A stretch of DNA of 62,000 nucleotides. Origin: Octopus vulgaris (taxonomy: Eukaryota). Numbering within the stretch: the first letter of the stretch is position 1; the number at the start of each line of letters is the position of its first letter. Under the pieces are notes generated by a model. That model saw nothing but the letters and a program-made list of their open reading frames with translations, made no database searches and was not told the DNA's origin. A program made the position numbers and the translations under genes. This document shows, in pieces, positions 12,032 to 57,484 of this stretch. Location: positions 118,006,001 through 118,068,000 of the forward strand of contig OX597817.1 of NCBI GenBank assembly GCA_951406725.2, given 5' to 3'.

Positions 12032-14685
12032 TGTATATAGTTCAGCAAAATTTAGATTCAAATGAATATGGTACTTAAGTTAGATGCACCAGAATTTTGT
12101 ATGGTGTTATCCATATAAATTCTTTCTTTTTTTTGATATTCTCCTATACTAAATAGCATAAATTCTGTGTCCCTAAAGAAACTATTTGGTTCAACTATGG
12201 AAGATGGGAAATGACGCAAATAAACTACTACGCAGAAACTTTGTTGCAGCATAATTTTGAATTTTGTTGCAGCATAATTTTGAATTTAGTGTTGGAATTC
12301 TACCTTACCTTTTCACAGAAACCAATAGCAAGTAGGGTTTCAATATAGTAGAGAGCTTAACTCCTGATGATTGAGATATATTCATCAGCGGAAAGATTGG
12401 AAACTCTAATAGAATTATTTACAAAACTAATATAAGACAGAACGGTTAGATTTATCTGTAATATAGTGGAGGCACTCGTTTCTTTAAGAACGAAGCAGTA
12501 TGAATTTATTTTAAAATAAAGCAATATCTAAAAATGTAGGGACTCTAAATTTATTCTCGAATATAACATTATTTTTATTAATGAAGTATATAGGCTGAGG
12601 TTTTCGATTATATTCCAGACCAGACTTTGACAACCCAGTGGAAACTTCTAAAGTATCGTCCCTATATAGACCATACTCAATTTTAGAAAAAAATTAAGTG
12701 GTACTGATGAAGGAATAATCCAACCATGATGCACGGATTTATATGATTTCATTGTACCATACTGGATCACAAATAAAAAAAATTCCGACTAGTTAAGCCA
12801 GAGTCATCGGCTACAGCCGTTAAAATGTTCAGCCTCCGTTTTCTGAACAAACTCACTTTCAAGATGCTACTCACAAATTATGCATCCATATACATATATA
12901 CGATCGCTAGTACACGACCACTTGCACATATACATTCCTGTATAGATATAGTAAAGTTGAATGAGAACTTGAGTGAGAGATATTGAAAGGGAGTAGAAAG
13001 GGGAGAGAATGTAGTTTAGTGTTAATCAGAGGAGATGTCAGGCTAAGTAAAGTGTTTATGTGTTCATGTCCTGAGCGGTGAATGAATCTACGCTGGTGCA
13101 TACAGGATCTGTACCCTTCTCTCTGGATTTCAAGGTAAAATTTCGTTGGAGTATGCTGTAGCGTCACTGTTAAGCTAACAGAAATTGTTGCATTGGAATT
13201 TAGTAAATCAGCTTCGAGTACCCGTCATAACGTCAGCAGTTTGAAGACTATGAGTACTTTGAGGCCATATGTATCTCAATTAAAGGAATCCAGTGAGACA
13301 ATTACGCCTCTTTGTGTCCTAGTGAGTGACACTGGAGAGGAGACGAATCGTTCTTCATGAAATAGAACAGTATTGCTTTGAGGCTCTTGGATGAACTATT
13401 AATGAAGAGGCTCCGATTCCTGTGCGTGGTGACATTTTGGTAGAAGTAGGACCCGTTTTTCCCCTATGTAGGACCCATCCCCGTTCGAATAGGATTCATT
13501 TTGGTTGGCGTACAACCGAATTTAGCTGGAGTGCGAACGATTGTGGCTAGAGTAGAAACAATTTTGGATGCAGTAGCAACCATTTGGACTAGAGAAGCAC
13601 CCATTTTGAGGGAAAAGAAACTGGAAGATTTGTGGCCTTATAAACTACAGCAAAACCAGCCTAGAAGTCGCCAGCATATTTTAAGCATTTGTGAATTGTT
13701 TGCAAACAAGTAACCATGAACAATACTAAAACTAATGTTTGACATTAGAGTCAGCCTACTAAATTAACAATATCTCACTGAAGTGGCATTTCACATTTAC
13801 AATCATCACTTTTATCATAACAGTAAATATTGTGTGTTAGTTCCGTGGATATCAGAACATGTCTACTTATCCTCCGCAATTGATTTGTGTCACTAGCATA
13901 ATATGATTAATATTAGAATGCACGCGATATCCCGAAATGGATATAATATTATGCAACAACAGCTAACTGCAGAATTGCCATGCAAAGAATTCATAATATG
14001 CAGCGCTAAGTAAGATGTTCAATGCAATAAAATGAGGTTTCTAGCTTGTATCCTGCTATATTCCTTACATGAAGTATTAAAGCGAAATGTAAATCTCTAG
14101 AGCTCATTCCAATATATTTCACATATTTTCACAGCAAACCATGCACAGGAATTATAACAACCATGCCATTGTACTCCCTATATCTATTTATAGCCTTTCC
14201 TTTTAAATTGTCTTCACTTTCTTTGTTAACATAACATTCATTTTAAGATTTGTACTGCTTTTTCTTCGTTTATTAAACAATGCTGCAAACCTTTAACAGA
14301 TTATACAACATACCCATGTAGGAATAACTATCAGTTATTTCCATGTTCCTTGAATAATAATGCACCCAATTGAACATATTTCAGTAGATATATAAATAAT
14401 ACAGGGTGTGAGAATAAAAGCATGATATATTTAAACTATGCTTATCATTCACGTTCGTGCTCGCAAAATTTTGAATAAAGGAGTAAGAATATGAATCTCA
14501 TATAAACTGCATTTCAGTAATAAAAGCTTTTCAAATTGCGAATATGTGGATTTAGTTATGATAATGTTCCATCTTTCCGTGAGTCCTACAACGACGCGCT
14601 GTTTGCATACATGTGTGCTTGGATATATGTACATATATATATATTTACTCATGTATATATATATATGTATACATATATACTCATG

Positions 14686-21816: not shown

Positions 21817-23725
21817 GCAACAATCCTATGTGAAGGAGAAAGCAGACAAAGAAGCCTGGGTTATAAAAAACATTAAATCAAACCCAAAGGCCTTCTTTCT
21901 TTACGCGAAAGAAACAGCCTCAGTGCACTACAAGATAGGACCCCTCCTCTAAAAGGATGGCTCCCTCACAGACAGTCCACCTATGATCAGTGAGATGCTG
22001 AATGACCAGTTCAAAAGTGTCTTTACCACTCCGTTGGAACACAGACAAGTGAACGAACCAGTGGACTTCTTTGCCGCCTCACCTATAACCAGCGAGGCGG
22101 TTACAACAGAATGTATTGACATTAGCGAAAAAGATGTCCTACTAGCCATAGATGAAGTGGACACAAACTCAGCTGCTGGTCCAGACGGTTTCCCAGCCAT
22201 CCTCCTCAAAGCGTGTAAGCATGCCCTGGCAAAACCCCTCAAGATTCTCTTCCAGAGCTTTCTTGCGAATGGCAGACTGCCAAGCAAGCTGAAGGAGGGA
22301 ATAATATGCCCAATACATAAAGGGGGAAGTAGAGCAGATGCCAAAAACTATAGGCCTATCTCTCTGACTTCACAAATCAGCAAAGTCATGGAAAGGATAG
22401 TCAGAAAGAAACTAATCGCATTCCTTGAGGAAAATAACTTGCTGAGTAATACCCAGCATGGTTTTCGACCAGGGAGGAACTGCCTGACCCAGCTCTTACA
22501 GCATTATGACTAGGTGTTGAGGCAGTTACTCAACAAATCAAATGTGGACGTAATCTACCTTGATTTTGCAAAAGCTTTTGACAAGGTGGATCATGGTATG
22601 ATATGCCACAAACTACGTGACCTCGGCATAGCTGGAAAACTTGGAGTGTGGTTGCATGACTTCCTGAAAGATAGGAGTCAGGCAGTAGTGGTTAATGGAG
22701 CCACCTCTATGAACACACAAATAGTGAGCGGTGTTCGACAGGGCACCGTCTTGGGACCACTGCTTTTTATAGTGGCCCTCTCAGATATGCCCTCAAATGC
22801 CCGGATAGCCACTCTGGCCAGCTATGCAGACGATACGAAAGTCTCGCAGAAAATACAGAACCCCAGCGATGTTGCACACCTGCAACAGGAGTTAGACTCA
22901 ATCTACAGATGACCTGAGAATAATAATATGCAGTTTAATGCTGAAAACTTTCAGGCCCTGCGCTACCAGCATCCAATATTGAATATTAAACTTACAGGAT
23001 ACACCGGTCCACAGGGAATTTCAATCCCAGAGCCTAAGTCTGTGAGGGACCTGAGTATCGACAGAAGTGATGATACCTCTTTCCAAGTGCACATTACCAA
23101 GATGGGGACAAAGTGCAGACGACTGTCTGGGTGGATCCTAAGAACATTCAGAACCAGAGATAAGGAAACCATGATGGTCCTCTGGCGGGCATTCGTCCTC
23201 AGTCGCCTGGATTACTGCTCACAGCTGTGGTCACCCACCGGTGTAAAATTAATAGCGGACCTTGAAGTAATCCAGAGCAGATTCACAAAGAAGATCGTCT
23301 CTTTGCAACTGCTCAGCTACTGGGAAAGGTTGAAACAGCTAAGACTCTACTCCCTGGCGAGAAGACGGGAGAGGTATGCAGTAATATATGTCTGGAAGAT
23401 CCTGGAAGAAATTGTGCCAAATTTTGGCATTGTAAGCTACACCAATGCTAGAACGGGACGACACTGCATAGTGCCAAAGATCCCAGCAAAGCCATCACGC
23501 TTCAGGACCAGCTTCTGCAACAGCATGGGTTTCAAGGGCCCACAGCTTTTTAATATTCTCCCAAAAAGTCTGAGGAACTTGCACAAAGTAGATGTAGCGG
23601 TTTTTAAATCAAAGCTGGACATCTTCCTGTCAAGAGTCCCAGATGAACCTACCTCACGGCAAGAGGTGCAAATGAGAGTAGCTGTATCAAACTCCATCCT
23701 TCACCAAGTGCCACATATTAGATGA
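21817..23725 (+). pseudogene. LINE ORF2 reverse transcriptase, one frame with three in-frame stops
   Basis: Track ORFs 21653, 21983, 22514 and 22928 share one frame; stops at 21950, 22511 and 22910. The endonuclease domain is absent. Confidence 0.9.
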
Positions 23726-24443: not shown

Positions 24444-25705
24444 TAGGGGTTGGACAAAATAATGGAAAAACCTAGCATCATAGCATCATAATTTTGAAAT
24501 ATCTATAAAAGCGTCAAAAGCGTGTTTATGTTTATGTTATTTTCTATTTATCATTATTGTTGCTTAGTATCATTTGCTAAAATTGCTCTTTCCTTTCAGA
24601 TATAAGAAAAAAGGTAGTTAAAATGAATTAACATGACAGATCTATTGGACTTTCAAAGACGTTACACTCAATAAACAGTCCTGGCACGCGCTAGCGGAAC
24701 AAAAAACAGCTGAAATGTTTGTTGTATCAAGAAGTACTGTCTTGAAAGTAATGACAGCCTTTGAGAAAGAGGGAAAAAAACCTCCTTGTCGAAACAAAAC
24801 TCCGGAAGAAAGCCAAAACTTTCAGATAGGCCCTGTTGGAATCCTCCACGAATTGTTAGAAAGTATCACAAATGTACAGCTCCCAAAATTTCTGCAGAGC
24901 TTAATGACCACCTCGAGAACCCAGTTTCAAATAAAATTGTTCGCCGGGAGCTGAACAAAGCCGGATTTCACAGGAGTGCTGCAATCAGAAAACCACTAGT
25001 TTCAACAAACATTACAAAGCGATTAGAGTGGAGCAAAAAACCTACAGATTTGGTCCTTCGATCAGGGGCAGAATGCTATTTTCTCAGAATATTCATCCTT
25101 TACTTTATTTCCGAAAACTGGCCGAGTATATGTGTGGAGACAGCCAAAATAAACATTTCACCCAGACTGCTTTGTTCCAACTGTTAAACATGGAGGAGGA
25201 TCTGTGATGATTGGGGTGGGGTATACCTTGGAAATCCGCAAGCCTTCGTGACATAATTAATATTCAAGACTATTTAAGTATTTTATCTGATCCAATTCAT
25301 CTAATGGTTGCGGAAATGTTTCCGGAATGAAACGCACTCTTTCAGGATGATACCCTACTAATTTAAACAGCTAAAGTTGTTACTGAATGGCACGAGGAAC
25401 ATTCTAGTGAAGTTGAGCATCTTATCTGGCCACCACAATCCCCAGATCTCAATATTATTGAACATTTATGGTGCATTTTAGAAAAACATGTATGAGGTCG
25501 ATAACATCCTCCATCATCACTACGAAAACTGGAGACTGTTTTAGCTGAAATATGGACACAAATTCCTTTGGAAACAATTCAAACATTCTAGGAGTCCATA
25601 CTGCGTAGAATTCAAGTTGTAATTACTACCAAAGGCGGTCCTACCTCTTACTAAAGTAAATTTGTTTGAAAGTTTAGTGCTTCCATTATTTTGTGTAAAC
25701 CCCTC
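24444..25705 (+). mobile_element. Full-length decayed Tc1-family transposon
   Basis: TIRs (c/t)aggggttggacaaaataatggaa ... ttccattattttgtgtaaacccct with TA flanks. Transposase motifs SGRKPKLS, TVKHGGGS and WPPQSPDLNIIEHLW. Confidence 0.92.
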
Positions 25706-53284: not shown

Positions 53285-53346
<62 letters not shown>

Positions 53347-53348
<2 letters not shown>

Positions 53349-53506
53349 ATTTTTTTCTCTCCTTGCTTTTTTTGTGTCCCTATCTGGAGCGTAGGCTCGA
53401 AACGTAAAAGACCTTTTCTATTCCTGAGCGTTATAGTTATACATCTGTTTGTTTTGTACACCACCTCTCTTCGTCTTTTCTTTTTTCGTAAACTTTCCGT
53501 ATATAT

Positions 53507-53594
<88 letters not shown>

Positions 53595-53770
53595 GTATGT
53601 ATATATATATATATATACGGAAAGTTTACGAAAAAAGAAAAGACGAAGAGAGGTGGTGTACAAAACAAACAGATGTATAACTATAACGCTCAGGAATAGA
53701 AAAGGTCTTTTACGTTTCGAGCCTACGCTCCAGATAGGGACAAAAAAAAAGCAAGGAGAGAAAAAAATGT
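53347..53770. repeat. Fold-back with 154-bp arms around a palindromic (TA)n spacer
   Basis: 53347-53500 versus 53617-53770; one mismatch seen. Confidence 0.96.
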
Positions 53771-53833
<63 letters not shown>

Positions 53834-53855
53834 AAATTAATATGTCACCATTATT

Positions 53856-54003
53856 CAATAGCCAAGATAAAACTCTGATTTTCGGATGCCGAAGTGGAAA
53901 TCCACAGCAACATCTTTTCGGTTAGATGGCCACATAACCGAAGAGATGGTGTTGTGGATTTCCACTTCGGCATCCAAAACTCAGAGTTTTATCTTGGCTA
54001 TTG
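53856..54003. repeat. Fold-back with about 69-bp arms and a 10-nt loop
   Basis: 53856-53924 versus 53935-54003; several mismatches. Confidence 0.93.
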
Positions 54004-54097
54004 TATAATTGTAACATATTATTTTATAGATAAATTTTTTCTATTTACATAATATTGAGATCTCTTTCTTTCATTTGTTGTCTTACCGTTTTTACCA

Positions 54098-54159
<62 letters not shown>

Positions 54160-54921
54160 ATGTTTGTGTGTCGGTATTTGTCTCCCAACATCGCTTGACA
54201 TTGGATGTTGGTGTGTTTATATACCCGTAACTTAGCGGTTCGGCAAAAGAGACCGATAGAATAAGTACTAGGCTTACAAAGAATAAGTCCAGGGGTCGAT
54301 TTGCTCTTCTAAAGGCGGTGCTCCAGCATGGCCGCAGTCAAATGACTGAAATAAGTAAAAGAGTAAAAGATTAAGATTATTTGTACAAATTTGTTTTCAA
54401 ACGCAGCTTTTTGTTGCTGACCTATGCATCCTTTCCTAAATTCATACGAATAACCTCAAAGGCCTGACGCACCCGTACTCACATATAGACATATATTGAT
54501 ATAATGTACCTATATATATATATATATATATAAAATTACAAATTGAGATAGGGGCTGTGAGTGCAACCCACTATGGGATAACATGTATCCAATATACTGC
54601 TAGTAAAGCACCCAACAAAGTTAATACATAAATGTTAAGAATTGCGATGCAATTAGTTCATTCACTGTATTATATGGGCAAAGGTAAAATGTTTTACCAC
54701 AAATTAATAATACAAAATAAGAAAATGGAGAAATGCATCTTAATCAATAATCAACTACCAGATAATACCCAATCATATAATTTATTAAACCACTACATAT
54801 GAACATTAATGTCAAACATAATAATATAGAAGAAAACAAGGTACATCAATGAGTAATAAGATACCATAAGTACAGTATGTATAAGTGAATATAAATAAAT
54901 ACAAATATAAATATAAACTAC

Positions 54922-55048
54922 ATTTTACAGCTGTTTCAGCCATGCAGATATGGGTGCCTCATTATGCTCATATTAGCCATGCGTGGTAGGTTCATATGTA
55001 GTTATAAATGAGACACTTACAAAAATATCCCAAGGCCTCTTCAGAGAT
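54922..55048 (-). ncRNA. Hammerhead ribozyme candidate in the left arm; stem I weakened
   Basis: Inverted copy of 55256-55382 with the core intact; the 3' strand of stem I reads AAAU instead of AGAU. Confidence 0.5.
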
Positions 55049-55102
55049 TATGAAGAACAAACTAAATAGAACATATGTATGTATATTGTTGTATATTATT
55101 AT

Positions 55103-55137
<35 letters not shown>

Positions 55138-55255
55138 AGGAGTATGGGTATATGCACTCATATGTATGTGTATATTATATATTATGGGTATGTACCCACT
55201 CTTGTATGGGTGTACCTCCTCTGATTTTCCTATTTAATTTAGTTTGTTCTTCATA

Positions 55256-55382
55256 ATCTCTGAAGAGGCCTTGGGATATTTTTGTAAGTGTCTCATTTAT
55301 AACTACATATTAACCTATCACACATGGCTAATATGAGCATAATGAGGCACCCTTATCTGCATGGCTGAAACAGCTGTAAGAT
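55256..55382 (+). ncRNA. Type I minimal hammerhead ribozyme candidate with a long helix II insertion
   Basis: AUCU-CUGAAGA(55260-55266)-GGCC[92 nt]GGCU-GAAA(55367-55370)-C-AGCU-GUA(55376-55378)-AGAU. All core positions are present, with a 4-bp stem I, a 4-bp stem II (one G-U) and palindromic ACAGCUGU as stem III. Confidence 0.65.
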
Positions 55383-55591
55383 GTAGTTTATATTTATATT
55401 TGTATTTATTTATATTCACTTATCCATGTTGTAATTATTGTATCTTATTACTCATTGATGTACATTGTTTTGTTCTATATTATTATGTTTGACCTTAATG
55501 TTCATATGTAGTGGGTTAATAAATTATGTGATTGCGTATTATCTAGTAGTTGATTATTGATTAAGATGTATTTCTCCATTTTCTTATTTTG

Positions 55592-55623
<32 letters not shown>

Positions 55624-56960
55624 CCAACACATTCATATGTGTGTGTGTGTGTGTGCTTTTAAAGAGACACTATGCAACTACACGCTCCCATCTTTAGCAA
55701 AACAATTATATATGCAAGGAAAAATTGATGACCGCATTGCACCACATACTGTATAGAGTCAGGTTTAATATGAAGTTAGACAACAACAACATATCCGTGA
55801 CTAATTACAAATACCGTTGTCTAATTAGCGAAGCACATAATTTAGACATTTAGAGTATAATATTCTATTTAGTTTATATGATTAACACCAAGAAACTTCA
55901 TAATTCATTGCATTGCTTCAAGAGCGTCTGGTATTTCTTTGACTGTATCCTACTTCTAGACACACAATAAGTTCGATCTTGTTCATCATATTTTGCTATA
56001 TCATTTGTTCAGTCTGTGAAGAATATAGGGTACGTTAATTAACATTCCTAATCCAAGAGAGAAAACTTGAAGCAGTATGTATATAATCGAAATGCTCAAT
56101 AAAAATAGAAAATAACGTTAACATTACCTTACATTTCAGAGAAATAAATATCCATTCCTAACCAGCGAATCTCAAATCAAAATTCTAACAAGCAGTAATT
56201 TGTCGGTTGTTTCGACTTACAAGAAGGCTTGGAATTATTTTCCGTCAAATCCCAACTTTCGAAATGGTGTTATTAGAGCATATAGCTTGTATTATAGTGC
56301 GCAGATGTGTGTGTGTGTGTATACATGCGTGTGTGTGTTTGTTAGTGCGTGTATGCATGTACGTATGCATACACAAGAGGCAGTATGCATGTACGTGTGC
56401 ATAGATAGTATTAAGTTCATTATTTGTGAGTGTACTCCTTGGATATATAACAGTGATAATTATATTCATGAAAAACGATAGAGCTTTCTCTGTGAAATTA
56501 CCCAGGCACCAGCTCACAGAGAAACATGAATTCACATATTCAAATCTTCAACCATACGCGCACAGATACATACAAGCATGCATTCATATGTCAGTGTGAT
56601 TGTAATTTATGTGACAGTGTGAGTCTTCGTGATCCTGCAAAATATATTTTTTTGTTAGGGGCATTCTAACAAACATGCAATGGCATATGGTGTGATAGTT
56701 TCCGGGGATAAAATCAAATGATCATTCACAAATTTTGTTCTGCACAGAATCTACCTATGTAGATATTTTTCCTTAGGTAAGTTGAAGTAATGTTGAAAAA
56801 TAAAAGAGAGAAGATATAATAAATAGTTTATGTATTTGTTTTGTAAGGGTTTGATGTGAAACCGTATGTTGCAACAGATATTGTTATACATGGGGATGAT
56901 CAAATTGAATAAGCAGAACAAGATTGGTCCAGGCCATGTCTAACATATATATATATATAT

Positions 56961-57197: not shown

Positions 57198-57484
57198 ATA
57201 TACTATAATACATTTATGTATGTTTGTATATATGTGTGGGTGTGCGTGTGTATGTATGTATATATATAGATTGATAGATAAAACTTACTTGGAAGAGGAT
57301 GCGTGGCGTTCAATCATATGACACTATATATATATATGTAAATATATATATATAGTGTCATATGATTGAACGCCACGCATCCTCTTCCAAGTAAGTTTTA
57401 TCTATCAATCTATATATATACATACATACACACGCACACCCACACATATATGTACAAACATACATAAATGTATTATAGCTATAT

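What the first reader, a model, noticed from the sequence alone, without database searches (positions are those of the whole stretch)
54710..55594. Intact hammerhead core with a 92-nt structured helix II insertion, present in both orientations
Seen: all catalytic positions, with predicted cleavage after 55378. The helix II insert contains further pairings (gugucucauu/aaugaggcac, 10 bp with one G-U; cauauua/uaauaug, 7 bp), so it extends as an irregular rod. Stem III is the palindrome ACAGCUGU. Known: such minimal type I hammerheads in PLEs are proposed to act as dimers. Inference: a possibly still active ribozyme of unusual architecture. A read-through transcript would instead form about 358 bp of dsRNA, masking it, so the fold-back may act as an off switch or a small-RNA source.
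Basis: partly seen in the sequence, partly recalled or inferred. Interest (0 to 1): 0.8.

Follow-up and report, generated by a model that had tools for sequence, protein, structure and literature searches.

The report
Retrotransposon hammerhead with long helix II
The fold-back is two truncated copies of the tail of a Penelope-like retrotransposon (an octopus-type genome) that landed head to head in a TA microsatellite. Each copy carries the family's conserved hammerhead ribozyme motif, whose second helix is stretched into a ~100-nt rod that standard ribozyme models miss.

Summary
The window has a 358-nt inverted repeat, 95% complementary. The + strand carries a complete type I hammerhead (HHR) motif at 55256-55382, with predicted cleavage after 55378. 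Its helix II is 100 nt long and stem III is the palindrome ACAGCUGU.

Two details were overlooked. The 10.1/11.1 pair is a G.U wobble, not the usual G-C. The left-arm copy has an A.C mismatch in stem I.

The motif is not chance: a descriptor found 1 hit in the window and 0 in 200 shuffles. It belongs to the long 3' untranslated region of a Penelope-like element (PLE) whose ORF ends in a GIY-YIG-like domain. That region has at least ~1,900 candidate copies in a 2.8-Gb genome.

Diverged sublineages, including one Octopus sinensis locus, keep the 24 core nucleotides exactly while the rest is 51-61% identical. The helix II rod shows 7 compensated base pairs.

The fold-back is the known PLE signature, an inverted 5'-truncated copy abutting another copy. 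About 29% of the copies examined have such a partner, always head to head. Nothing supports a locus-specific "off switch".

This is a new architectural variant of the known PLE minimal hammerhead. No Rfam HHR model detects it. Catalytic activity is untested.

The parts
54511..54531 (.). (TA)n microsatellite flanking the left copy's 3' end; presumed target sequence
   Evidence: Read. Family copies end in (TA)n at their 3' ends, and in some truncated copies also at the 5' side.
54532..55067 (-). Left copy of the PLE 3' UTR on the minus strand. It covers family positions 1 to about 566, including the ~208-nt 3' extension that the right copy lacks. It is 5'-truncated exactly at the junction (55067).
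   Evidence: The flank 54541-54709 matches the 3' extension seen in L003, L008, L015, L027 and others. It differs from the sample consensus at 11 positions.
54710..55067 (-). Left arm of the inverted repeat
   Evidence: I1
54922..55048 (-). Left-arm hammerhead copy: CUGAAGA 55044-55038, helix II 55037-54938, GAAA 54937-54934, stem III 54934-54927, H17 at 54926. The core is intact; stem I has an A.C mismatch at 1.2/2.2.
   Evidence: Exact pattern hit G000:C4:118060927-118061044(-), which is window 54927-55044. Sequence.
55068..55594 (+). Right copy of the PLE 3' UTR, family positions about -169 to 358. It is 5'-truncated at 55068 and ends at the alternative 3' end followed by (TA)n.
   Evidence: Homology to other copies extends 171 nt upstream of 55237 (alignment). 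It differs from the sample consensus at 9 positions.
55237..55594 (+). Right arm of the inverted repeat
   Evidence: I1
55256..55382 (+). Hammerhead motif, type I, open stem I. Stem I 55256-59 with 55379-82; CUGAAGA 55260-66; G12 A13 A14 55367-69; stem III palindrome ACAGCUGU 55370-77; H17 is A55378, with cleavage predicted after it.
55267..55366 (+). Helix II, a 100-nt irregular rod. Closure GGCC/GGCU with G10.1.U11.1, then a lower helix, an internal loop, the 10-bp helix 55288-97 with 55341-50, and an apical 7-bp helix.
   Evidence: Folds. RNAalifold. Pair counts.
55597..55623 (.). (TA)n microsatellite flanking the right copy's 3' end

Best explanation
The 885-bp fold-back is a dead-on-arrival composite. 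[quoted passage not shown] Both 3' ends abut a (TA)n microsatellite.

Inferred mechanism of formation: target-primed reverse transcription from both strands of an AT-rich target. This matches the in vitro behaviour of a lizard PLE enzyme, which cleaves and extends both strands.

Each copy carries the family's hammerhead motif. In full elements the motif lies about 2.1 kb downstream of the ORF stop and 0.2-0.4 kb from the element's 3' end. It is a PLE-type minimal type I ribozyme:
- a short open stem I
- no loop-loop contacts
- an 8-nt palindromic stem III that can only form a stable helix between two copies
- helix II extended into an 85-100-nt rod

Shown: the anatomy, family membership of the locus, exact conservation of the core, and compensatory change in the rod among sublineages.

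Inferred: that the motif cleaves, as a dimer, in multi-copy transcripts of full-length or tandem elements, and that the rod has a role of its own.

At this locus the motifs are relics. The right copy has G.U at 10.1/11.1 and a GUA cleavage triplet; the left copy also has a stem I mismatch. Any read-through RNA would fold into a ~358-bp duplex.
For: Family and context:
- At least 1,923 candidate copies, with the 40 scored copies 94-100% identical to the window's right arm.
- Variable 5' truncation, and two alternative 3' ends, each followed by (TA)n.
- The region is contiguous with an ORF ending in a cysteine-rich linker and a GIY...YIG motif. Pfam GIY-YIG is marginal, E = 0.017. A relative carries the RT core motif YRDD (P0002).
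- The hammerhead lies downstream of the ORF, in the same orientation, at four independent loci, including O. sinensis L075.

Inverted partners:
- 11 of about 38 loci have a 5'-truncated partner that retains the 3' end.
- Every close pair of intact motifs is (-,+), that is head to head.
- The literature describes exactly this arrangement, plus a microsatellite/AT-rich target bias (PMC8557442) and two-strand cleavage and extension (PMC11167929).

Ribozyme motif:
- 1 descriptor hit against 0 in 200 shuffles.
- The 24 core nucleotides are 24/24 identical in the L013 sublineage and in L075, while the rest is 51-61% identical (Fisher p about 2-4e-6). The L013 sublineage has at least 2,060 candidates and is itself young, 95-98% identical.
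- Rod, alignment A5: 94.3% of cells paired, 7 pairs compensated on both sides, covariation score 0.129 against 0.108 +/- 0.005 in shuffles (0 of 500 reached it) and 0.012-0.070 in slid controls.
- RNAalifold recovers the closure, the lower helix and the 10-bp helix independently.
- The rods of the sublineages fold with z = -5.5 and -6.6.

Same genome:
- It holds canonical 42-nt PLE minimal hammerheads with the same CUGAAGAG...GAAAC core and a stem III that is a near- to perfect palindrome.
- A second family has a ~64-nt helix II insert and passes Rfam's cut-off.
- A third, unrelated helix II sits on the same core at C10:27045641.
Against: - No cleavage or expression data exist for this element.
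- No Rfam hammerhead model reports the motif at E <= 10, even for the variant with G-C and GUC. A model built from this genome's canonical minimal hammerheads also misses it.
- G10.1.U11.1 departs from the highly conserved G-C. That sublineage still proliferated, which fits either tolerance of the wobble or a ribozyme that is dispensable for transposition. Hammerhead cleavage was not needed for transposition in vitro in PMC11167929, and Naiad PLEs thrive without one (PMC8557442).
- The hammerhead-compatible monomer fold (-28.0 kcal/mol) loses to a fold that sequesters GAAA (-34.9).
- The covariation rests on few independent events among related copies. The rows were partly selected by a pattern that required an intact core.
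- Pfam support for the GIY-YIG domain is only marginal.
Confidence: 0.8

Rival explanations
1. The locus is a regulated unit in which the fold-back acts as an off switch for an active ribozyme, or serves as a hairpin source of small RNAs (or as an ADAR substrate).
For: A 358-bp, 95% complementary hairpin is physically certain in any read-through transcript. Both arms keep the catalytic boxes.
Against: The arrangement is generic for the family and for PLEs, with variable partner lengths from 43 to 358 nt (PMC8557442). The arms have drifted independently by about 2.5-3% each and share only 1 variant, so there is no sign of selection on the pair. There is no promoter, ORF or expression evidence. 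Four other unrelated inverted repeats lie within 4 kb.
Confidence: 0.06
2. The conserved boxes and rod are not a ribozyme. They are a protein-binding or reverse-transcription-initiation structure of the 3' UTR, and the hammerhead-like core is retained for another reason or is a non-catalytic relic.
For: The motif sits near the 3' end, where retroelement RTs recognise their template. The lizard PLE starts reverse transcription inside a stem-loop and does not need hammerhead cleavage (PMC11167929). The U11.1/GUA sublineage still amplified. A competing fold is more stable.
Against: What is invariant is exactly the hammerhead signature: CUGANGA, GAAA, A15.1-U16.1, H17 and a palindromic stem III. 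The rod sequence varies and can even be replaced by unrelated inserts. The same core occurs in the canonical minimal hammerheads of this genome.
Confidence: 0.1
3. The inverted repeat arose after insertion of a single copy, through local inverted duplication at a palindrome-prone TA microsatellite, or it is an assembly artefact. It is not a product of PLE integration.
For: The neighbourhood holds other inverted repeats centred on TA runs. One has 110-nt arms that are 100% complementary with a 4-nt spacer.
Against: The two arms differ in both their 5' and 3' end points (pos 1 to ~566 against pos -169 to 358) and by 5% in sequence, which is not expected for an artefact or a recent duplication. 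The same head-to-head geometry with 5'-truncated partners recurs at many loci.
Confidence: 0.04

Closest known systems
Minimal hammerheads of Penelope-like elements (Cervera & de la Pena 2014, PMC4209133; dimer cleavage: Lunse et al., cited in PMC6765202)
   Same: Type I topology, location in the PLE non-coding repeat region, a short ill-defined stem I, no loop-loop tertiary contacts, and a palindromic stem III that requires a dimer. Massive copy number with sequence families and compensatory changes.
   Different: Helix II is 85-100 nt with internal loops, against 6-8 bp. There is no bulged nucleotide between A9 and 10.1. The window's sublineage has G.U instead of G10.1-C11.1. The motif sits about 2.1 kb downstream of the ORF in a very long 3' UTR.
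Canonical 42-nt PLE hammerheads and the ~108-nt variant of the same genome (Rfam RF00163 hits; L031-L060)
   Same: Same CUGAAGAG...GAAAC core and a stem III that is a near- to perfect palindrome (ACAUGUGU, ACACGUGU, ACGAUCGU). The L032/L033 family also carries a large (~64 nt) insertion in loop 2 and occurs as a head-to-head pair.
   Different: Different stem I (GUAC/GUAC against AUCU/AGAU), a different helix II base (GACCC/GGGUC against GGCC/GGCY) and an unrelated insert. Those families are found by Rfam or by my model R1; the window's family is not.
Inverted 5'-truncated copies in PLE insertions (Evgen'ev & Arkhipova 2005; Craig et al. 2021, PMC8557442). L1 'twin priming' inversions are an analogue, recalled from my own knowledge.
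   Same: A 5'-truncated inverted copy abutting the 5' end of another copy. Insertion into microsatellite or AT-rich DNA. Target-site duplications cannot be discerned.
   Different: Here both partners are short 3'-UTR fragments with no ORF. In the canonical picture the inverted copy precedes a full or tandem unit.
Animal non-LTR retrozymes (PMC7229834; bioRxiv 10.64898/2026.07.22.740005)
   Same: Hammerhead-bearing non-coding sequences related to PLE pLTRs and probably mobilised by PLE machinery.
   Different: Retrozymes are short (~170-400 nt) tandem units giving circular RNAs. This family consists of dispersed 5'-truncated copies of a multi-kb element, and no short tandem array was seen.
Naiad 'HHR_half_core' cases (PMC8557442)
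   Same: Core halves CUGANGA and GAAA separated by much more than standard descriptors allow (35-50 nt there).
   Different: Those were unvalidated split cores in N-terminal-EN PLEs. Here the EN is C-terminal, the spacer is 85-100 nt, and conservation and covariation were shown.

Membership tests
Hammerhead ribozyme, type I | Conserved core: C3 U4 G5 A6 N7 G8 A9, G12 A13 A14, A15.1-U16.1, H17 | tested here: met
   CUGAAGA 55260-66; GAA 55367-69; A55370-U55377; A55378. The core is identical in the sublineages and in O. sinensis.
Hammerhead ribozyme, type I | Three helices around the core, with stem I open (the 5' and 3' ends) | tested here: met
   Stem I has 4 bp, helix II is closed by 4 bp, and stem III is 2 bp plus an AGCU loop, or 8 bp as a dimer.
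Hammerhead ribozyme, type I | G10.1-C11.1 closing pair | tested here: not met
   Both window copies have G.U (U55366). C11.1 is present in 51 exact genomic hits, in L074 and in L075. C11.1-G12 forms a CpG, so decay to T is plausible (inference).
Hammerhead ribozyme, type I | Match to the curated covariance models (Rfam RF00163 and other hammerhead families) | tested here: not met
   No hammerhead family is reported at the gathering score or at E <= 10. The likely cause is the 78-92-nt insertion and the short stem I.
Hammerhead ribozyme, type I | Site-specific self-cleavage | not testable with these tools
   Needs in vitro transcription or RNA-end mapping.
PLE minimal hammerhead (min-HHR) | Located in the non-coding repeat region of a Penelope-like element | tested here: met
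   Contiguous with the RT/GIY-YIG-like ORF at four loci.
PLE minimal hammerhead (min-HHR) | Very short or palindromic stem III, implying a dimeric active form | tested here: met
   ACAGCUGU is invariant in all 29 aligned rows. The dimer itself was not tested.
PLE minimal hammerhead (min-HHR) | Helix II of about 6-8 bp, with an unpaired nucleotide between A9 and 10.1 | tested here: not met
   Helix II is 85-100 nt and there is no bulge.
Penelope-like element, canonical EN+ | [quoted passage not shown] | tested here: inconclusive
   The ORF ends with a Cys-rich linker and VVY..(x)..VYIG..R..H. Pfam GIY-YIG is marginal at E = 0.017 and gave no hit on the C-terminal piece alone. The RT motif YRDD is present in the relative P0002, and homologues carry RVT_1/HTH_animal.
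Penelope-like element, canonical EN+ | 5' truncation, inverted 5'-truncated partner copies, microsatellite or AT-rich targets | tested here: met
Non-LTR retrozyme | Short tandem repeats, each with a hammerhead, giving circular RNAs | tested here: not met
   Copies are dispersed. No short tandem array was found at the 30 loci. Circular RNA is not testable here.

The most novel reading that the evidence does not exclude
The 85-100-nt helix II rod is a functional module grafted into the ribozyme. It could be the binding or priming platform for the element's reverse transcriptase, or a stabiliser that replaces the missing loop-loop contacts. If so, octopus PLEs carry a distinct, active 'long-helix-II' class of hammerhead. 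Current covariance models and descriptors miss this class systematically, so it may be common in other invertebrate genomes.
Probability: 0.2. Interest if true: 0.6.

Novelty: new variant of a known kind. Interest (0 to 1): 0.4.

Why it matters
Hammerheads in Penelope-like elements are known, but their role is unresolved. They are dispensable in vitro and absent from the very successful Naiad clade.

This family keeps the catalytic boxes invariant while carrying and co-evolving a ~100-nt helix II. At least two other unrelated helix II inserts exist in the same genome. Together these show that searches with fixed-length descriptors or Rfam models under-count these ribozymes.

The family also offers natural variants for testing what the ribozyme does for the element: C11.1 against U11.1, GUC against GUA, and different rods.

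The locus itself is an ordinary dead insertion. Its fold-back illustrates the two-strand priming model of PLE integration rather than a regulatory device.

Tried and rejected
- **Rfam:** the gathering search on the whole window and the E <= 10 searches on 54600-55700 and on L075 gave no hammerhead. They returned only sub-threshold miRNA-like hits in TA/TG-rich sequence, which I regard as low-complexity noise.
- **Own covariance model:** model R1, built from 15 canonical 42-nt hammerheads of this genome, finds the L032/L033 long-insert family. It does not find the window motif, even with filters off. The model is very sequence-specific, so this is a weak negative.
- **Metagenome scan:** an exact-pattern scan for the motif gave 0 hits.
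- **Protein route to other species:** the N-rich low-complexity linker swamped the first search. The EN-only search found nothing. The RT-fragment search found only relatives at 47% identity or less outside O. sinensis. Only one extra locus (L075) was obtained.
- **Fetching more genome sequence:** I worked around it by running each pattern together with its reverse complement, since each search prints 80 nt of every match.
- **Wasted search:** one pattern had the wrong gap length.
- **Retrozyme reading:** considered and rejected because there are no short tandem units.
- **Naiad (N-terminal EN) reading:** rejected because the ORF ends right after the GIY-YIG-like domain.
- **'Spacer' as a separate feature:** rejected because it is simply more of the right-hand copy.

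Full report
**1. What is in the sequence**

The repeat finder reports arms 54710-55067 and 55237-55594. Each is 358 nt, they are 95% complementary, and 169 nt lie between them.

Read directly, the + strand of the right arm contains:
- stem I: AUCU 55256-59 pairing with AGAU 55379-82
- CUGAAGA: 55260-66
- a 100-nt helix II: 55267-55366, closed by GGCC/GGCU
- G12 A13 A14: 55367-69
- the palindrome ACAGCUGU: 55370-77 (A15.1...U16.1)
- H17: A55378

Helix II folded alone gives exactly those helices (-27.9 kcal/mol, z = -2.6).

A descriptor of my own required the core boxes, at least 4 bp closing helix II, a self-complementary stem III, H17 and at least 3 bp of stem I. It finds this one site in the window and none in 200 dinucleotide shuffles.

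Three corrections apply:
- The pair 10.1/11.1 is a G.U wobble. G-C is highly conserved in hammerheads (HHRs) generally and in those of Penelope-like elements (PLEs) (PMC4209133).
- The left-arm copy (minus strand, 55044-54927) has an intact core but an A.C mismatch in stem I.
- No Rfam HHR family reports the motif, even at E <= 10.

**2. What the surrounding element is**

The window lies in a 2.8-Gb assembly with chromosome-scale contigs. The right arm has at least 1,923 candidate copies. The 40 that were scored are 94-100% identical to it.

Aligning 30 loci shows the following:
- Homology continues upstream of arm position 1 for variable distances, which is 5' truncation.
- It continues downstream in one of two ways. 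Copies end either at position 358 or about 208 nt further on.
- In both cases the end is followed by a (TA)n run.

Two copies share about 3.7 kb upstream. That stretch contains an ORF ending in a cysteine-rich linker and a GIY...YIG motif. Pfam GIY-YIG is only marginal, E = 0.017, and the isolated C-terminus gave no hit.

This ORF has at least 7,309 candidate relatives in the genome, many of them in head-to-head pairs. Its nearest database relative is an Octopus sinensis protein that contains the RT motif YRDD and is annotated as a 'GATA zinc finger' protein. More distant relatives carry RVT_1/HTH_animal domains.

The ORF stops right after the endonuclease-like domain. I therefore read the element as a canonical C-terminal-EN Penelope-like element, not a Naiad.

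The HHR lies about 2.1 kb downstream of the stop codon, in the same orientation, at four independent loci. These are two on contigs C5 and C1, one on C27 (about 3.1 kb there), and one in O. sinensis (L075: ORF end 11917, HHR at 14029).

**3. What the fold-back is**

The '169-nt spacer' is homologous to the family sequence immediately upstream of position 1. The true structure is therefore:
- a left copy on the minus strand, covering family positions 1 to about 566 (window ~54532-55067)
- a right copy on the plus strand, covering positions about -169 to 358 (window 55068-55594)
- the two joined directly, 5' end to 5' end
- both 3' ends abutting (TA)n (54511-31 and 55597-623)

Among about 38 unique loci, 11 have such an inverted partner. 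The partner always retains the 3' end and is truncated at the 5' side to between 43 and 358 nt.

Among the intact-core hits listed genome-wide, every close pair is (-,+), that is head to head, and none is tail to tail.

[quoted passage not shown] A purified lizard PLE protein cleaves and extends both strands of an AT-rich target (PMC11167929). That offers a mechanism, namely reverse transcription primed from both strands, with the two cDNAs meeting head to head. This last step is inference.

The two arms differ from the sample consensus at 9 and 11 positions and share one variant. That is ordinary independent decay with no sign of constraint on the pair.

**4. Is the hammerhead a real, selected feature?**

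Yes, at the level of the family.

- **A second sublineage.** It was found by chance in locus L013. It has at least 2,060 candidates that are 95-98% identical to one another, so that copy is close to its own master sequence.
- **Core conservation.** Compared with the window, the L013 copy and the O. sinensis copy keep CUCUGAAGAGGCC and GAAACAGCUGU 24/24 identical. Helix II interior and the flanks are only 51-61% identical (Fisher p about 2-4e-6). Both have GUC at the cleavage site. A third, older copy (L074) has a mutated box, CCAAAGA.
- **Exact pattern searches.** They give 109 genomic motifs with U11.1 and 51 with C11.1, against 0 for the reversed controls.
- **Covariation.** Pairing each search with its reverse complement recovered whole 118-nt motifs from several sublineages. 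Seven pairs are compensated on both sides (21 cells). The covariation score is 0.129, against 0.108 +/- 0.005 in shuffles (0 of 500 reached it) and 0.012-0.070 with slid partners.
- **The 10-bp helix.** It carries three compensated pairs, including a G-C to G.U to A-U series.
- **Independent prediction.** RNAalifold predicts the closure, the lower helix, the 10-bp helix and the tip on its own.
- **Rod stability.** The rods of the two diverged lineages fold with z = -5.5 and -6.6.

Caveats apply. The independent events are few, the copies are related, and the pattern-derived rows were selected for an intact core. They therefore inform only on the rod.

**5. How it compares with other hammerheads in the same genome**

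Rfam's Hammerhead_1 model finds typical 42-nt PLE minimal HHRs, such as GUAC-CUGAAGA-GACCC...GGGUC-GAAAC-AUGUGU-U-GUAC. It also finds a ~108-nt family in which about 64 nt are inserted in loop 2 (35.6 bits against a cut-off of 34).

A model built from the 42-nt set recovers that second family through a local insertion. It also shows two copies head to head in L032. It does not recover the window's motif.

A further copy at C10:27045641 has the window's core and GGCC/GGCU closure but an unrelated, branched ~105-nt helix II.

Long helix II inserts are therefore recurrent in this genome's PLE HHRs. The window's family is the longest and the only one of these that Rfam misses.

In the papers I could search I found helix II of 6-8 bp described for PLE HHRs (PMC4209133). 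I also found unvalidated 'half-core' cases with 35-50-nt spacing in Naiads (PMC8557442). I found no description of 85-100-nt rods. Lunse et al. could not be read.

**6. Likely mechanism and activity**

By analogy with PLE minimal HHRs, two sense copies would pair through ACAGCUGU/ACAGCUGU to form an 8-bp stem III and cleave after H17. Such ribozymes cleave slowly in vitro even as dimers (PMC4209133; PMC6765202).

For the window's right-arm sequence, the HHR-compatible monomer fold is -28.0 kcal/mol. The minimum-energy fold is -34.9 kcal/mol, and in it AUGGCUG pairs with CAGCUGU and sequesters GAAA.

A transcript through the locus contains only one sense HHR on either strand, together with its perfect complement. 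It would form the long duplex, and no dimer could form in cis.

The window's sublineage has U11.1 and a GUA triplet. L075 has C11.1 and GUC, and the L013 sublineage has GUC (with U11.1); C11.1 also occurs in other copies of this genome. Since C11.1-G12 is a CpG, U11.1 may reflect deamination in a master copy (inference).

Its continued amplification has two possible readings. The wobble may be tolerated, or cleavage may not be required for transposition, as reported in vitro for the lizard element (PMC11167929).

**7. Verdict**

The identification as a PLE minimal HHR is right. The helix II extension is a real, conserved architectural variant.

The off-switch or small-RNA interpretation of the fold-back has no support beyond physical plausibility, because the fold-back is the standard scar of PLE integration. 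This particular locus is a non-autonomous relic.

The finding is a new variant of a known kind and is of moderate interest. No full-length element sequence or consensus was built; only the 118-nt motif was compared.

Noticed in passing
family positions 358 and ~566; window 55594 and ~54541; loci L003, L008, L015, L016, L027 against L005, L006, L023, L029: Copies end at one of two alternative 3' termini about 208 nt apart. Each terminus is followed by (TA)n. This could reflect internal initiation of reverse transcription at two UA-rich sites, as reported for a lizard PLE.
   Followed up: partly
window 53296-53821: A second inverted repeat (263-nt arms, 96% complementary, no spacer). It is made of an unrelated ~155-nt repeat on either side of a central (TA)n run, with more (TA)n outside.
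   Followed up: partly
window 57228-57451: A perfect palindrome: 110-nt arms, 100% complementary, 4-nt spacer, centred on a TA run. It is either a very recent event or a possible assembly artefact.
   Followed up: no
window 53833-54026: A 97-nt-arm inverted repeat (89% complementary, no spacer) that looks like a MITE or a hairpin element.
   Followed up: no
window 21983-23725 and 24786-25187: ORFs that, by inspection of their translations only (no family search was run), look like non-LTR retrotransposon RT pieces in three consecutive frames, plus a Tc1/mariner-like transposase fragment. The region is repeat-rich with abundant TA, GT and other microsatellites.
   Followed up: no
L032:1501-1608(-) and L032:1694-1797(+): The other long-helix-II hammerhead family also occurs as a head-to-head inverted pair about 85 nt apart.
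   Followed up: partly
G000:C10:27045641-27045763(+): Same hammerhead core and GGCC/GGCU closure as the window, but with an unrelated, branched ~105-nt helix II. This is a third kind of helix II insert.
   Followed up: partly
L038, L039, L048, L058, L059 (match at 1501-1542/1546): Several canonical 42-nt PLE hammerheads read CCGAAGA instead of CUGAAGA, changing the core U4 to C. They are probably an inactive sublineage; a CpG/TpG relationship is possible.
   Followed up: no
G000:C20:8786111, 8799884, 8813031, 8825436 (all +): Four intact-core copies spaced about 12.4-13.8 kb apart in the same orientation. This suggests a tandem segmental duplication that contains the element.
   Followed up: no
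P0002 / L075:10001-11514 (O. sinensis GCA_006345805.1): The protein annotated 'GATA zinc finger domain-containing protein 14-like' is a PLE RT fragment followed by an Asn-rich linker. It is probably a mis-annotated transposon gene model.
   Followed up: partly
window 55134-55206 and 55589-55657: Sub-threshold Rfam hits to mir-297/mir-466 (38 bits against a cut-off of 90) in TA/TG-rich sequence. I regard these as low-complexity noise.
   Followed up: yes
window 55361-55377: AUGGCUG can pair with CAGCUGU across the GAAA box. This gives an alternative hairpin that is incompatible with the hammerhead fold and is part of the minimum-energy structure.
   Followed up: partly
L061:6177-6941(-): A mariner/Mos1-type transposase fragment (Pfam Transposase_1, E = 3e-25) lies next to the 5' truncation point of the C5 PLE copy.
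   Followed up: yes
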